Program-made: the position numbers and the translations under genes | Notes under the pieces: generated by a model | Told to the model about the DNA's origin: nothing | Seen by the model: only the letters and a program-made list of their open reading frames with translations | Database searches by the model: none | Part shown: in pieces, positions 3,801-63,764 of the stretch | Position numbering within the stretch: the stretch's first letter is position 1 | How the letters are laid out: each line of letters opens with the position of its first letter | Origin: Asterias rubens | Taxonomy: Eukaryota | Assembly (NCBI RefSeq): GCF_902459465.1 | Contig: NC_047079.1 | Coordinates: 7,564,001 to 7,628,000 of the forward strand | DNA length: 64,000 nucleotides | Reading direction: 5' to 3'

Positions 3801-6800
3801 CAGATTAACTTAATCCTAACACTTACTTAATCCTCTAATTTTTAGAGGATTACTACCTTTATCCTACGATTTACAGAATTCTTCCCTCTAAAAATTCTAG
3901 AATGTACTTAATTCTGTGACTTAATTAATCAACCGATTCGTAGTATGAAAGGTTTTTGGTTCGATTCCCGGCTAAGATGGATATTTTTGGATATTTTTGG
4001 ATATTTTTGGATATTTTTCTGTTGGACTTAGAAAGCACTGAGCAGACATTGTGATCTGCCCATAAACTTCAAATTGATCTTGTTTTAGCTGACTGTTATT
4101 ATGGCATGTAACTAGCTTTTTACTTGTCTGGTCTCCTATTTATTGCTTAGAGTTCCTAGTATGAAATTCTTGTCAAATCTGGGGGTCTAGAATAAGAGGG
4201 ACTCAGACCCAGCAAGCCGTTTGTCAGGAATGTTTACATTCATCCAATCTCATCTCTGTAATTATGATGTCCCAAATTCCTCTTCTTTACAGAGCTGTAC
4301 ATCACCACCGAACCAATCTACTCTGGAGAAGCCTCAATGCCTGGCAGCAAGCCCCTCCATCTCACAAGAGGGCAGCAGACCAGCTCAGGCAGAAACATCT
4401 GCTGCGTAAAGGGCTACGAAGCCTCCGATGGTCTGCGATGAAGAGCAGACTGGAGATAGAGGGCGCTGCAAAGAAACACGTTGAGAAAACGCTGGCACAT
4501 CATTTTAGCATCGTGAGTATATTGGGTGCTTGTGTTAACTGTTGTTGGAATTGTGTAGGGTTTGAGAAAATGGATAAGTTTGCTCCAAAGATTTGAGAAC
4601 CAAACAATCCTCTAAAATAATTTTCAAAGTTTTTGTTTCAACTTTCTACAAATTTTTGTGAAAAATTACCTTTGTGATGTTTTTAGTGACGACCAACTGA
4701 GATTCTGTTTTCGCATCAACACCATTTTTTGTTTAACCACAGTGGAAGGAGCTCCATCAGGTACGAACTGAGCATGCTCAGCTCCTGGAGAAACTAACGA
4801 GACACCATTCAGTTTCTAAGACGTTCCGGACGTGGAAAGATCGCTACAGTATGGTCCAGAAAAGGGGAATAGCCAAGCTACACTTCAAGTAAGGAAGGGT
4901 TGCAGAGATTGTCATTTTCAAGCAAAGATTATCCATGGCTACAAAAGTTTGCAAAAGAAGTTTGCAACAAAAGTTGCCCATAAATTGCAATAAAACCATT
5001 GAAAAAATTTATGACAAAACAAAAACTTGTCTTAAGTAGGATTAGAAACTTTGCACAACTCTGGTTTCAACTCATCAGAAGACAATCAGAGCATACTGAT
5101 CGAAACATTGAGTTAAAACCAACGGTTCTTTTCAGAACCACCCCAACTCATTTAGAGATTATCATTACATGGTGTTATCGCAAACCTTTACTATACAACT
5201 TGTGTTGTTCCTAATATTTCTTCTCTCATCTTGCTCTATGTTTCAGAGTAAGCCTTCTGAATCAAGGCTTCCATTACTGGAAGATGTTCACCACTAACTC
5301 CAAGGTCAAAGGTTATCGCATTGAGATGAGCCGAGTACATCGTGAGGAGAGGGTCCTGAAGACGGCCTGGTGTACGATCAAAATGGTCTATGCACGGACC
5401 CAGCAAGCTAAAGAACACTACAGGTAAGTAGCTTTTACTATTGATAGGATTTAAAGCTTTAATAAAAATAGTGGCTTCTTCTATTGTGCCCATATCTGTC
5501 ATAAACTGCGTTGTACGCTTTGAAATAACCATAACTGTATTTTAAAGATGTTCCAATCGATGTTTTCTTAATTCAGCCAAAAACTGCTGTCTATTGTCGT
5601 GCATACCTGGTTGCGAGGTGCGAGCCTCGCCAAAGCCGAACGACACCAGCATCATAGCCAAGCCCTAGAGTTGAGACGTTATGGGCTCATGAGGGCTCAC
5701 TTCAAGCGCTGGATGGAAGAACTGACTGTGGTACGCGTGAAGCAGAGGCTGGACATCGTACGATTACGGTAAGGGTCAAGATTAATTTGTTTTGTTTCCA
5801 GTGAAAATATGACAAGTAGTAGTAGTTGAGCGAGAGGTTGTCTTCAGCCAACAACATCTCGGGAACTGATGGTCACCACCAATCAAAAGGTGGAATTCTT
5901 GTAAGGGGTGTTACAAAAGAAATCAGCGTACTGGAAATCGCAGTTTTCATTGTGTTTGATAGATCCTCACTCAACGATTATTTCTCTAGATACGTCTGGG
6001 AGTTATGGACGCTCCGTATGCAGAGGAAACAACTTTATCGTCAGATTATGGACTCCCAGGCCCGTAAGGTTGCTAAGCAACACCATTTCAACAGATGGAG
6101 GTTGGTTGCTAGGAGACAGAAGGATGCAGCGACTAAGGCTGGTCTTATCTTGAGGCACTTGTATCTCAAGATGGTCTTCAGGGCATGGAGGAATCATATC
6201 ATCAGAGAACGCGATCTACGGTAAGCAGGTTGTTGGTCTGGCTCGCTGATGCAGAATTGTCTGACGTTGGAGTATTTTGAGCAAAAGTGATGTCATTCGT
6301 GCAGAGTGCTGTTTGTGAATCTACTTGCACGCAGTGCAGGCTCTTTATGATCGGTGTCACATGATCACATTTTTTTGCAAAGACTACCAGTTTTTTGTGA
6401 CTTTCCGAAAACCCATTCATGAAACCTGTGGAAAGCACTCTGACATAGTTAGAGACTGTTTTTAACCCCCCCCCCCCCCAAAAAAAAAAAGTCATTAAAA
6501 ATTTTTTTTTTTATAATTCTTAACTAAAGATCAAATTCATAAGAAAATAAAGATAAAACCATATGGAACACCCCAGATCGCAGAGTATGGCTTTCAAAAC
6601 CAAAGATTAATTTATATTAGCAGGCTTTCTGCTGCTTTCGCGCTCTAAGCTTTCACGCTTTGCGCTCGCAAGCTTTCGCGCTTTGGGCTCATAGTTAAGT
6701 TGTTTACATCTCTGTATAATTGTGAAGCAAGTTTTATGAATGAATTCTCCATTTCAGGGACAGTATGACGGCTCTGATTCACAGCAGCCATGTTGTGTCG

Positions 6801-38096: not shown

Positions 38097-38656
38097 AATA
38101 CCTTTAAGCTGATAAGCAGAAAACATTGCTTAGCAAATACGTAACAGAATACCAGTCTTGTTAAAACATAAATGTTATGGTTTGGCTGGTAATCACTTCT
38201 GCTTAGCATAATTTATCTGTGCTCAGCAGATTATTGCTCTTCTCACTTGTGAAAGCCTCCTGTTTGGTTAATGCATTAACTGATATGACTAAATGACAAT
38301 GGTATGACAGGTGCTACTAACAACTACACCATGCAAGACATGTTATGTGATGTTATAAAGCGAGACATGCGGCAAGAACAAAAGCACAGTTTGAGTTGCA
38401 ACGCTAAGAAAACTCTATTACTGTACCTTATGACACAAGAAGAGTCGATGGATCCATTGGAAAGTTTTGAGAAGTAGTAACCGTCTCAGGCACAGAAGTC
38501 AAAAGACAAGTTCCAAATAACACATGCACGTTCTTCTCTGTATTGCCAAACTTACTTAGTCATCTTGCTTGCCTAGGGGCTTTATGAGAACAGTTGCTGG
38601 TGTCTTTTTATGTATGGAATTATGAATTTAATGTAGTGAGGCTTGTGGTGACACCT

Positions 38657-39543
38657 TGTACATGAGTAGGATTTGAAACTTTGCATGGCGGAAATACAAT
38701 CAAGTAAGGTTTGCAGTAACACCATGTACATGAGTAGGATTTGAAACTTTGCATGGCGGAGATACAATCTAGTAAGGTTTGCAGTAACACTATGTACATG
38801 AGTAGGATTTTAAACTTAGCATGGTGGAGATACAATCTAGTAAGGTTTGCAGTAACACCATGTACATGAGTAGGATTTGAAACTTAGCATGGTGGAGATA
38901 CAATCTAGTAAGGTTTGCAGTAACACCATGTACATGAGTAGGATTTGAAACTTAGCATGGTGGAGATACAATCTAGTAAGGTTTGCAGTAACACCATGTA
39001 CATGAGTAGGATTTGAAACTTTGCATGGTGGAGATACAATCTAGTAAGGTTTGCAGTAACACTATGTACATGAGTAGGATTTGAAACTTTGCATGGCGGA
39101 GATACAATCTAGTAAGGTTTGCAGTAACACTATGTACATGAGTAGGATTTGAAACTTAGCATGGTGGAGATACAATCTAGTAAGGTTTGCAGTAACACCA
39201 TGTACATGAGTAGGATTTGAAACTTAGCATGGTGGAGATACAATCTAGTAAGGTTTGCAGTAACACCATGTACATGAGTAGGATTTGAAACTTTGCATGG
39301 TGGAGATACAATCTAGTAAGGTTTGCAGTAACACTATGTACATGAGTAGGATTTGAAACTTAGCATGGTGGAGATACAATCTAGTAAGGTTTGCAGTAAC
39401 ACTATGTACATGAGTAGGATTTGATTCTTTGCATGGTGGAGATACAATCTAGTAAGGTTTGCAGTAACAACATGTACATGAGTAGGATTTGATACTTTGC
39501 ATGGTGGAGATACAATCTAGTAAGGTTTGCAGTAACACTATGT
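38657..39543. repeat. 68-bp minisatellite, 13 units
   Basis: TGTACATGAGTAGGATTTGAAACTT(A/T)GCATGGTGGAGATACAATCTAGTAAGGTTTGCAGTAACAC(C/T)A, starting every 68 bp from 38657 to 39473. Confidence 0.95.
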
Positions 39544-56760: not shown

Positions 56761-57107
56761 TGTTTGATGTTTCTCTCATCCCATGTTTGGTTTGTTCACT
56801 TAAGGGGATTAGGCACCTTTCCAAATATTGTGTTTTAGGGGAAGTAATTTTGTGAGTGACTGCAGGCTGGAAATACACAGAGGCCACGGAGTTCATGGCC
56901 TCTGTTGCCCCTGTTCTTGGCCTTGGTGCCCCTTCAAAAGTTCCCCCATAAACTTATTTAAAGATTTTTCCAATGGAAGTGCCCTTGGCACTATGAAAAT
57001 GACATTGCCCTCTCGAAGATGAAGTTCAATGCCTGGAATGTAAAATGTAATATTGTCAGACAGAAGCTATTATTGCTTTGCAGCGTGCCCTTCCAACGTT
57101 CTCAAGA

Positions 57108-57492
57108 CTGATACTTAACAGAGGTAACAAAGAGATTGCCTCCAAGCCCCTTGGTCACTGCCTTGGTGCACATCCAATGTTCCCAACCCTGATACTTCAT
57201 GGAGGTAACAAAGAGATTGCCTCCAAGCCCCTTGGTCACTGCCTTGGTGCACATCCAATGTTCCCAACCCTGATACTTAACAGAGGTAACAAAGAGATTG
57301 CCTCCAAGCCCCTTGGTCACTGCCTTGGTGCACATCCAATGTTCCCAACCCTGATACTTCACAGAGGTAACAAAGAGATTGCCTCCAAGCCCCTTGGTCA
57401 CTGCCTTGGTGCACATCCAATGTTCCCAACCCTGATACTTCACAGAGGTAACAAAGAGATTGCCTCCAAGCCCCTTGGTCACTGCCTTGGTG
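57108..57492 (+). repeat. 81-bp tandem array (about 4.8 units) built from the end of a dispersed element
   Basis: CTGATACTT starts at 57108, 57189, 57270, 57351 and 57432; the last unit runs into CCTTGGTGCCCTTGAAATG, as at 37740-37850 and 58070-58250. Confidence 0.92.
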
Positions 57493-58042
57493 CCCTTGAA
57501 ATGCCCCAGTAGAAATAGGGAGCCCTTAAGTCAGAAGAAAATGCCTTGGTGCCCTTGCCCATCAAAACGAAGCATACCTGTGTTCCAGTAGAAAATTATT
57601 TAAGAAAAACCTGTCAAATTGCGTTAATAAAGAGTGTGTCTGCTAATTATCTATGCAAGTAGACAGGTGTTTCATGTAGTTTCTCAATCTAGCCCCACGT
57701 CTAAAATTCCCCTCAGTCACGTTTGAGTGCAGTGAAATTTTCACCTGTCCGAGTACTATGGCATTTTGCCAGGGTCTTTAGTTTTACCTGGTTTTACCAA
57801 GGTACCTCCAGTTTGCCCAATACGCCTGGAAATGTTCCCCTGAACTGTTTAGTGGCCTAATGAAGATGCCCTTTAGCTGTATGGTGAGTTAATTGCCTTT
57901 ATTGATGCATGAATACTGCTCATTGTTCTCTTGTGGCACGATTGTACTTGCCTCAGTCTAATTCAATGTCGCCTAACTCACTTTGCTTATAATATATCTA
58001 GGGACTAACAATCTTACATGGGGTGCATATCTGACCACAACT

Positions 58043-62100: not shown

Positions 62101-63130
62101 GGCTGGGATGGGAAACATTTACAAAACAAGGAAGATGATGTGAATGGTTTGAATCCTAGCTTAGTGTGGATGAGATTTGTTTATTTAGTTAGCGAGTGAC
62201 CTGATTGGTTGTGGAATGTAGGGGACTAAGTTTTTAATCTGGGCAATTATGGGCCTCGCACTTTTGACATGAGTTGACGAGATCTTGACTAAAATTACAT
62301 CAATTTAAAGAAAATAGCAACTTCCAGGCTCCAGCCGTGTGAAAGTTTCCTTGTTGTTTTTAACATTGATCCAGACCTAAAAAAAAAAAAAAAAAAAAAC
62401 ATGTTAAAATTACCTTGGTGTAAACTGTCCCATTACCAAGGACCCTTGCTATCATGCACAGAACTTGTCGCTAGTACAAGAAAGTGTTCAATGAATTTAC
62501 AGTCATGACCTTTGCCCCCCTGAAACAAAACATGGGTGCTGCTAGTGTTATAAGTCATCTGAAATCTTGTTAAATAATTTGAATCAACTGAAGTGACATA
62601 CAACAAGCATCCATTACCGAGGAACTTTGTCTGGTGCTCACATGAAAGGTCCTTAAGTAGTTGACCATAAACAGTTACTTGATAACTGCCGAGAATCAAA
62701 TTGAAAACTAATTGGAGATGCTGGTTTAATTAAGACATCTTCGTCATATAAATTGCTTTATCCAACAGGGAAGCTGTTCGTTGTGTCAGTGACTGGCCAG
62801 CCAGACTAGTTTTAATTACAGTGTAGCTTGTCGTTTCATTAGTCAGTCAGCCTCTTCACCTCTTTCTTAAACTGAATTAGCCAGCCAGACTGCTAAGTCA
62901 GAAAATTTTGATTGTCTTAAATTCTTTTAGATTTTAACTTGGAAGAATGTACCAGGCTTCGAATTATCCTACGACCCTTCACCCAACAGCAGAAATTGCT
63001 GTGGTGCCCTTCGCAAAGTTCCAATACACATTTTCCTCACCAGAAAAAATTACTGTGCCCCTTCAAGAAGGGAATTCAAAACCTGCTCTACAATGTAAAA
63101 TTTCCTGTTTGTTTTTCTTCTTTATTGCAG

Positions 63131-63217
63131 GCACTTGATCTTGACCATTTTTGAACGAGTTCCACAGATGTGGTGCTTGTATACTCAATGCATCTCTAGC
63201 TTGTGTCTCTCAGACTC
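63131..63217 (+). other. Putative 5' UTR exon of the p53-family gene
   Basis: Strong acceptor TTTTTCTTCTTTATTGCAG and donor GTGAGT, about 100 nt upstream of the coding ATG. Confidence 0.5.
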
Positions 63218-63319
63218 GTGAGTTTCACTGACTCACTAAATACTCAGAACTCCCACATTACATGCACAAGCTGACTTGGTTTTGGAGAGTTATCCCTGTT
63301 ACGATAACGAAACTCAAAG

Positions 63320-63459
63320 ATGTCTTCCGGGGATCATAAGCCACCACTTTTAGATCCGACGATGTCGCAGGCCTCGGATGGAGGGCTAAGCTCATCGCAA
63401 CCATTGTCAGATGAAACTTTTAATCTACTTTGGCAGCAGATAGCAACTGGATCAATTGA
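63320..63459 (+). CDS. TP53: First coding exon of a p53/p63/p73-family transcription factor (transactivation domain); gene continues beyond the window
   Basis: Translates MSSGDHKPPLLDPTMSQASDGGLSSSQPLSDETFNLLWQQIATGSI, with an in-frame TAA just upstream and a GA|GTAAGT donor. PLSDETFNLLW aligns with human p53 PLSQETFSDLW (FxxLW). Symbol is family-level only; the DNA-binding domain is not in the window. Confidence 0.8.
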
Positions 63460-63764
63460 GTAAGTACATAACTCTGTAACTAACTCCGTAACTAACTTCG
63501 TAACTAACTCCGTACTGCAGGCCCGCGGGCAGAAGGTTTAGCTTTGGGCCAGTGTAAACTCAAGACCGGACTGGAAAAGTCCGGCAGTCTTGAGTTTTCA
63601 ATTGATCAATATTATATCACACAGGAAGAGTGATCTGTAATTAGAATACACTAACTCAGAAACGTATCTGACTTTAACATCTGACGGATTCAAATTTTGG
63701 GGGAAAGAAACTTATCTATTTTCATAGCCACAAAACTGTATACTCAAGCATGATATTCTTTCTA

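What the first reader, a model, noticed from the sequence alone, without database searches (positions are those of the whole stretch)
63320..63459. Hidden p53-family transactivation exon with an intact MDM2-binding FxxLW motif and two in-frame start codons
Seen: a 46-codon exon below the ORF-track cutoff, encoding QPLSDETFNLLWQQI; ATGs at 63320 and 63362, the second giving MSQ. Known: F19/W23/L26 of human p53 (PLSQETFSDLWKLL) bind MDM2; TAp63 starts MSQ and has a longer TA* form from an upstream ATG. Here F, W and I occupy the three anchor positions. Inference: the single ancestral-type p53/p63/p73 gene with an MDM2-regulated TAD and possibly TA*/TA-like isoforms.
Basis: partly seen in the sequence, partly recalled or inferred. 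Interest (0 to 1): 0.8.

Follow-up and report, generated by a model that had tools for sequence, protein, structure and literature searches.

The report
Starfish p53-family transactivation-domain exon
This short exon is almost certainly the start of the starfish's p53/p63/p73-type gene, carrying the conserved motif that in other animals binds MDM2. It is an expected, ordinary part of a well-known gene family rather than something new.

Summary
Window 63320-63459 (+) is 46 codons plus 2 bases. It has ATGs at 63320 and 63362 (MSQ), the peptide QPLSDETFNLLWQQI, an in-frame stop 13 nt upstream and a GTAAGT donor at 63460.

A profile built from five published invertebrate p53-family N-termini (amphioxus, acorn worm, sea urchin, two squids) hits this exon at 35.8 bits (E 1.4e-9). 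It was scored against 3840 six-frame ORF pieces of the window. The next best piece scores 8.9 bits, and 30 shuffles reach at most 11.7. The match begins at MSQ, the start used in amphioxus and squid.

So this is very probably the TAD-coding exon of the starfish p53/p63/p73 gene.

- The DNA-binding, tetramer and SAM exons lie beyond the window and could not be reached.
- MDM2 binding and TA*/TA-like isoforms are untested. Published affinities show that the motif alone does not guarantee binding.

Echinoderm p53/p63/p73 genes with this TAD, including one from the starfish Patiria miniata, are already described (PMC5543598). Interest is low.

The parts
63320..63459 (+). Coding part of the exon: 46 codons plus 2 bases (phase 2 at the 3' end), encoding the N-terminus and first transactivation motif of a p53/p63/p73-type protein
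   Evidence: profile hit 35.8 bits, E 1.4e-9
63362..63364 (+). Second in-frame ATG, giving MSQ, the conserved start of amphioxus and squid p53-family proteins. The profile alignment begins here
   Evidence: reference sequences from PMC10303687 supplements
63320..63322 (+). First in-frame ATG (context tcaaagATGt, A at -3). It adds 14 residues (MSSGDHKPPLLDPT) with no counterpart in the reference proteins
63401..63442 (+). BOX-I / MDM2-binding-type motif PLSDETFNLLWQQI. Anchors are F34 (63419-63421), W38 (63431-63433) and I41 (63440-63442). S30 and T33 correspond to human Ser15 and Thr18. D31 replaces the usual Q, so the S-Q kinase site is absent
   Evidence: PMC5543598 for the Ser15/Thr18 equivalents in echinoderms
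63460..63465 (+). Splice donor GTAAGT
63305..63307 (+). In-frame TAA that closes the reading frame 13 nt upstream of the first ATG
   Evidence: sequence read directly
63110..63130 (+). Best acceptor-like site upstream (ttgtttttcttctttattgcag|G). If used, the exon is 63131-63459 with a 189-nt leader. Weaker AG sites lie at 63319/63320 and 63353/63354. The 5' end of the exon is unresolved
   Evidence: pattern inspection only, no transcript data
63262..63339 (+). Possible upstream ORF (25 codons, other frame) that runs over the first ATG and ends 23 nt before the MSQ ATG. It matters only if the leader extends this far

Best explanation
Window 63320-63459 (+) is the first coding exon of the p53/p63/p73-family gene of this animal. 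An earlier scan note, which I did not check, says the genome is a starfish. The gene runs rightward out of the window. The exon encodes the disordered N-terminus with the BOX-I transactivation motif PLSDETFNLLWQQI. By analogy with characterised family members, this segment folds into a short amphipathic helix on binding, presenting F34, W38 and I41 on one face. That face would contact transcriptional co-activators and the SWIB pocket of the animal's MDM2-type ligase. S30 and T33 are at the positions of human Ser15 and Thr18. Shown here: the sequence, the reading frame, the donor site and a statistically strong similarity to known invertebrate p53-family N-termini. Inferred: that DNA-binding and oligomerisation exons follow downstream, that the exon is transcribed, and that the motif binds MDM2. 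Translation most likely yields one main N-terminus. Which ATG is used depends on where the exon or transcript begins, and that is unknown.
For: The reading frame, the two ATGs, the upstream stop and the GTAAGT donor are. A profile of five invertebrate p53-family N-termini (sequences from the supplements of PMC10303687) scores the exon at 35.8 bits, E 1.4e-9, against 3840 six-frame pieces. The next best piece scores 8.9 bits and 30 shuffles reach 11.7 bits at most. In leave-one-out profiles the exon scores 26-36 bits, in the range of a true member left out (sea urchin 23.4 bits; the others 45-55 bits). The alignment starts at MSQ and has invariant P28, S30, E32, T33, F34, L37 and W38. Identity to amphioxus is 62% and to acorn worm 56%. 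Ile at the third anchor also occurs in amphioxus (SQETFNHLWSQI). PMC5543598 states that all deuterostome phyla, including Echinodermata, have p53/p63/p73 genes with a TAD. It lists a Patiria miniata gene with Ser15 and Thr18 equivalents, which matches S30 and T33 here. A rough prior of one such exon per genome (about 1e-4 per window) against a chance expectation of about 1e-9 per window gives odds strongly in favour.
Against: Pfam P53_TAD (PF08563, cutoff 20 bits) reports nothing for the exon in three trimmings, while controls give 32.2, 28.8, 18.1 and 10.9 bits. No DNA-binding domain could be seen because the window ends 541 bases after the exon. phmmer against 1.84 billion representatives found only spurious bacterial repeat proteins. 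That is expected for a 46-residue query. It also means no close copy of this exon sat among those representatives. No protein with this exact 47-residue ORF is on record and no short homologue was found. The 9-residue core can arise by chance in very large collections: there were 96 pattern matches in metagenome contigs, and the one tblastn-confirmed match is a bacterial glycosyltransferase-like ORF. There is no transcript evidence.
Confidence: 0.88

Rival explanations
1. The exon belongs to the p53-family gene, but only one N-terminus is made and there is no TA*/TA-like pair. Either the first ATG (63320) is simply the start, or it is not in the mature mRNA (acceptor at 63353/63354) or is bypassed (uORF 63262-63339), so the protein starts at the conserved MSQ.
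For: The profile alignment and all reference proteins begin at or near MSQ, and the 14 residues before it have no counterpart. Both ATGs have A at -3, so if both are in the mRNA, scanning would favour the first. AG sites and a uORF exist that could exclude or bypass the first ATG.
Against: Nothing here shows which ATG is in the transcript. Acorn-worm and sea-urchin proteins have longer N-terminal leaders before the motif, so a 27-residue leader is not unusual.
Confidence: 0.7
2. The exon is a stray or decaying copy, either a duplicated TAD exon or the remnant of a paralogue. No functional DNA-binding domain lies downstream, and the working p53-family gene is elsewhere in the genome.
For: The downstream exons were not seen. 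Pfam P53_TAD fails and the usual S-Q is S-D. About 33 kb of repeat-rich, apparently gene-free DNA lies upstream.
Against: The frame is open from the ATG to a perfect GTAAGT donor. All invariant motif positions are kept. The start codon context and MSQ are kept. A decaying 140-base fragment would seldom keep all of these.
Confidence: 0.07
3. Chance: a short open frame in non-coding DNA that happens to resemble the p53 motif.
For: The motif is short. F..LW..[LIMV] occurs five times in the window. S[QDN]ETF[NH]xLW occurs 96 times in metagenome contigs, including inside a bacterial enzyme-like ORF.
Against: In-window E 1.4e-9, shuffles at most 11.7 bits against 35.8. In addition there is the MSQ start, the closed upstream frame and the consensus donor.
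Confidence: 0.02

Closest known systems
Invertebrate deuterostome p53/p63/p73 proteins: Branchiostoma belcheri V9I5U2, Saccoglossus kowalevskii XP_002738810/XP_002732135, Strongylocentrotus purpuratus H9N2D3 (sequences in the PMC10303687 supplements)
   Same: N-terminal MSQ start (amphioxus). Core (Q/P/L)PLSxETFxxLW. Ile at the third anchor as in amphioxus. 62% and 56% identity to the amphioxus and acorn-worm N-termini over the aligned part. A T/S-G-S-I stretch a few residues after the motif, as in sea urchin (TSGSI).
   Different: S-D instead of S-Q at the Ser15/Gln16 position. A 14-codon in-frame extension lies upstream of MSQ. The rest of the protein is unseen. No Pfam P53_TAD hit, whereas amphioxus and sea urchin pass the cutoff.
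Patiria miniata (starfish) p53/p63/p73 gene predicted by Aberg et al. 2017 (PMC5543598, Scaffold 74 JH768681)
   Same: Same animal class and the same expected domain set (TAD, DNA-binding, oligomerisation, SAM). Ser15 and Thr18 equivalents are reported there, and S30 and T33 are present here.
   Different: Its sequence is not held in the text or supplements I could read. Whether this window is that species or another starfish was not determined.
Human p53 BOX-I (PLSQETFSDLWKLL) bound to MDM2, PDB 1YCR as cited in PMC5543598
   Same: F, W and an aliphatic residue at i, i+4, i+7. The preceding PLS-ETF. Ser and Thr at the positions of Ser15 and Thr18.
   Different: Ile for Leu26. Asp for Gln16. 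No Pro after the motif (invertebrate TADs in general lack it). Binding to the cognate MDM2 is untested, and published invertebrate pairs are weak (mussel 15 uM) or undetectable (tick, placozoan).
TA*p63 / TAp63 N-terminal isoforms of vertebrate TP63 (from general knowledge, not tested here)
   Same: Two in-frame ATGs, the downstream one giving MSQ.
   Different: The extension here is 14 residues, in the same exon, and shows no similarity to anything. There is no evidence that both starts are used.

Membership tests
p53/p63/p73 transcription factor family | p53-type DNA-binding domain (Pfam PF00870) | not testable with these tools
   The window ends 541 bases after the exon. No tool gave the downstream DNA or the full-length protein.
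p53/p63/p73 transcription factor family | Oligomerisation domain, and a SAM domain in p63/p73-like members | not testable with these tools
   Outside the window.
p53/p63/p73 transcription factor family | N-terminal TAD with the BOX-I motif FxxxWxxL, similar in sequence to known members | tested here: met
   A profile of five invertebrate members gives 35.8 bits, E 1.4e-9 in the window. Leave-one-out profiles give 26-36 bits. F34, W38 and I41 are in register.
Pfam P53_TAD (PF08563) | hmmscan score at or above the gathering cutoff of 20 bits | tested here: not met
   No hit at E up to 10 for the 46-, 32- and 23-residue versions. Controls: sea urchin 32.2, amphioxus 28.8, acorn worm 18.1, squid 10.9 bits. 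Two accepted family members also fall below the cutoff, so this weakens membership of the Pfam model, not of the protein family.
MDM2-regulated TAD | Hydrophobic triad at i, i+4, i+7 | tested here: met
   F34, W38 and I41. Ile at the third anchor is also found in amphioxus.
MDM2-regulated TAD | A cognate MDM2 with a SWIB domain in the same genome, and measurable binding | not testable with these tools
   No MDM2 gene was seen in the window, the rest of the genome could not be searched, and earlier scan notes hold no 'mdm2'. PMC5543598 says all deuterostomes have the MDM domains. Measured invertebrate affinities are weak or undetectable.
TA*/TA-type N-terminal isoforms | Two in-frame initiation codons, both present in mature mRNA and both used | tested here: inconclusive
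   Both ATGs exist with A at -3. Neither the 5' end of the transcript nor start-codon usage can be seen from DNA alone.

The most novel reading that the evidence does not exclude
The starfish p53-family gene makes two N-terminal forms from this one exon: a longer MSSGDHK... form and the ancestral MSQ... form. The choice would be set by an alternative acceptor (63353/63354) or by the upstream ORF (63262-63339) that runs over the first ATG and stops just before the second. In addition, the Ser15-equivalent lies in an S-D rather than S-Q context, so control of the TAD by ATM/ATR-type kinases would differ from other animals.
Probability: 0.12. Interest if true: 0.3.

Novelty: new member of a known kind. 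Interest (0 to 1): 0.15.

Why it matters
It matters little beyond annotation. The finding places the start of the p53-family gene in this genome and gives the sequence of its MDM2-type motif. That peptide could be added to comparative studies of how p53-MDM2 affinity evolved, where echinoderms have not been measured (PMC10303687). Two points of detail might interest specialists: S-D in place of S-Q, and Ile at the third anchor. The presence of a TAD with this motif in echinoderms, starfish included, is already published (PMC5543598).

Tried and rejected
- Pfam hmmscan of the exon in three trimmings gave no family.
- PDB sequence search gave nothing.
- phmmer against 1.84 billion representatives gave four hits. 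The two I read are bacterial proteins made of many tandem repeats, and all four were judged spurious.
- ESM Atlas look-alikes returned only unnamed short bacterial clusters and were uninformative.
- An exact-product look-up of the 47-residue ORF found nothing on record.
- A word-indexed homologue search found no candidate. Its length filter excludes full-length p53 proteins.
- Literature searches for the peptide strings ETFNLLW, LSDETF, DETFNLL and FNLLWQ found no paper.
- The metagenome scan with the motif returned one locus, which is a bacterial glycosyltransferase-like chance match.
- Earlier scan notes hold no p53, p63, p73 or MDM2 words. Nothing is noted near the exon, and there was no look-alike for a sea-urchin DNA-binding-domain peptide.
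- RNA folding of the exon is not more stable than shuffles (z = -1.0), so there is no sign of a structured RNA element like the one proposed for the human p53 BOX-I coding region.
- No further p53-like exon lies in the last 541 bases: the best other profile score there is 6.2 bits, E 2.3.
That step was left out.

Full report
**What is there.** Window 63320-63459 on the + strand reads MSSGDHKPPLLDPTMSQASDGGLSSSQPLSDETFNLLWQQIATGSI, which is 46 codons plus two bases (GA).
- The frame is closed 13 nt upstream by TAA (63305-63307).
- A consensus donor GTAAGT follows at 63460.
- ATGs lie at 63320 and 63362, both with A at -3. The second gives MSQ.
- F34, W38 and I41 are spaced i, i+4, i+7.

**Is it more than chance?** The bare triad pattern F..LW..[LIMV] occurs five times in the six-frame translation of the window, so it means nothing alone. 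The wider pattern [ST][QDEN][ED][TS]F..LW occurs once.

I took the N-termini of five invertebrate p53-family proteins from the supplements of PMC10303687: Branchiostoma belcheri, Saccoglossus kowalevskii, Strongylocentrotus purpuratus, Loligo forbesii and Euprymna scolopes. I built a profile without the query and searched all 3840 stop-to-stop pieces of the window.
- The exon scores 35.8 bits (E 1.4e-9).
- The runner-up scores 8.9 bits.
- The best of 30 shuffled windows scores 11.7 bits.
- In leave-one-out profiles the exon scores 26-36 bits. A left-out true member scores 23-55 bits.

The alignment begins at MSQ and has P28, S30, E32, T33, F34, L37 and W38 invariant. Identity to the aligned amphioxus peptide is 62% and to the acorn-worm peptide 56%. 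The reconstructed bilaterian motif in that paper is SQETFNHLWNTL; here it is SDETFNLLWQQI. Ile at the last anchor is shared with amphioxus.

Pfam P53_TAD (PF08563, cutoff 20 bits) gives no hit for the 46-, 32- or 23-residue versions. The control peptides scored as follows:

| Control peptide | P53_TAD score (bits) |
|---|---|
| Sea urchin | 32.2 |
| Amphioxus | 28.8 |
| Acorn worm | 18.1 |
| Squid | 10.9 |

So the model does see two of the four controls (sea urchin and amphioxus) above its 20-bit cutoff, and this exon is at the weak end. The likely reasons are Asp in place of the strongly conserved Gln after Ser15, and the QQI tail. Two accepted family members also fall below the cutoff. I therefore treat this as a failed membership test for the Pfam model, not for the protein family.

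**What could not be shown.** The window ends 541 bases after the donor, and those bases hold no further p53-like piece. The rest of the gene was out of reach by every route:
- phmmer of the 46 residues against 1.84 billion representatives returned only four hits; the two I inspected are bacterial tandem-repeat proteins.
- The exact-product look-up and the word-indexed search found nothing.
- The metagenome scan returned a single locus (L001), a bacterial glycosyltransferase-like ORF with FSQETFNSLW, which is a chance match.
- The scan's earlier notes hold nothing on p53 or MDM2 for this genome.

The DNA-binding, oligomerisation and SAM domains are therefore inferred, not seen.

**Context.**
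- An earlier follow-up on another piece of this genome calls it a starfish (s1-172674). I did not verify this.
- PMC5543598 states that all deuterostome phyla, echinoderms included, have p53/p63/p73 genes with all four domains. It lists a Patiria miniata gene and notes Ser15 and Thr18 equivalents in Patiria and sea urchin. S30 and T33 here fit that.
- Upstream of the exon lie about 33 kb without convincing coding ORFs and with several satellite arrays. Beyond that is a CIDE-N exon on the opposite strand at 29608-29904.

**Start of the exon and choice of ATG.**
- The best acceptor-like site is ttgtttttcttctttattgcag|G at 63130/63131.
- Weaker AG sites sit at 63319/63320 (directly before the first ATG) and 63353/63354 (between the two ATGs).
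- A GTGAGT lies at 63218.
- If the leader extends upstream, an ATG at 63262 opens a 25-codon ORF in another frame. It passes over the first ATG and stops at 63339, 23 nt before the MSQ ATG.

The DNA thus allows a long form, a short form or both, and nothing here decides between them. The reference proteins support MSQ as the ancestral start. Sea urchin and acorn worm have long leaders too.

**Mechanism.** By analogy with the family, the motif would form an amphipathic helix on binding. That helix would insert F34, W38 and I41 into the SWIB pocket of MDM2 and would also contact co-activators. This is inference. Measured affinities argue for caution (PMC10303687):

| TAD / MDM2 pair | Result |
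|---|---|
| Mussel TAD with mussel MDM2 | 15 uM, despite a perfect FxxxWxxL |
| Tick and placozoan pairs | no specific binding |
| Zebrafish 14-26 peptide (Asn at position 26) | not measurable |
| Zebrafish 14-26 peptide with N26L | 0.34 uM |

The S-D context removes the S/T-Q consensus of ATM/ATR-type kinases (general knowledge). The squid Euprymna has S-N, so this position is not fixed.

RNA folding of the exon shows no unusual stability (z = -1.0).

**Verdict.** The exon is an expected part of a known gene family, already reported for echinoderms. The more ambitious parts of the interpretation (single gene, MDM2 regulation, TA*/TA isoforms) remain untested. Interest is low.

Noticed in passing
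window 29608-29904 (-): A 99-residue ORF with a full CIDE-N domain (PF02017, 85 bits). It is probably the first coding exon of a DFF/CIDE-type apoptosis gene, on the strand opposite to the p53-type exon and about 33 kb from it.
   Followed up: partly
window 5119-5163 (+): Rfam histone 3' stem-loop hit at 35.2 bits, just above the cutoff of 34. It may be a chance match or a relic.
   Followed up: partly
window 34011-34849, 38630-39543, 57085-57493: Three satellite arrays: 23 bp x 36.5 (96% matches, open in all three minus-strand frames), 68 bp x 13.4 and 81 bp x 5. They lie in the apparently gene-free stretch upstream of the exon.
   Followed up: no
window 63469-63514 and 63544-63609: Directly after the splice donor there is a 12-bp tandem repeat (TAACTCCGTAAC x 3.8), followed by an imperfect 23-nt inverted repeat with a 20-nt loop. 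These are intronic features of unknown meaning.
   Followed up: no
window 63262-63339 (+): Possible upstream ORF of 25 codons that overlaps the first ATG of the exon and ends before the MSQ ATG. It is relevant only if the mRNA leader reaches this far.
   Followed up: partly
L001 3789-3878: A metagenome contig (SPJK01108408.1) encodes FSQETFNSLW inside a bacterial glycosyltransferase-like ORF. This is a chance look-alike of the p53 BOX-I core and a useful warning about motif-only searches in very large collections.
   Followed up: yes
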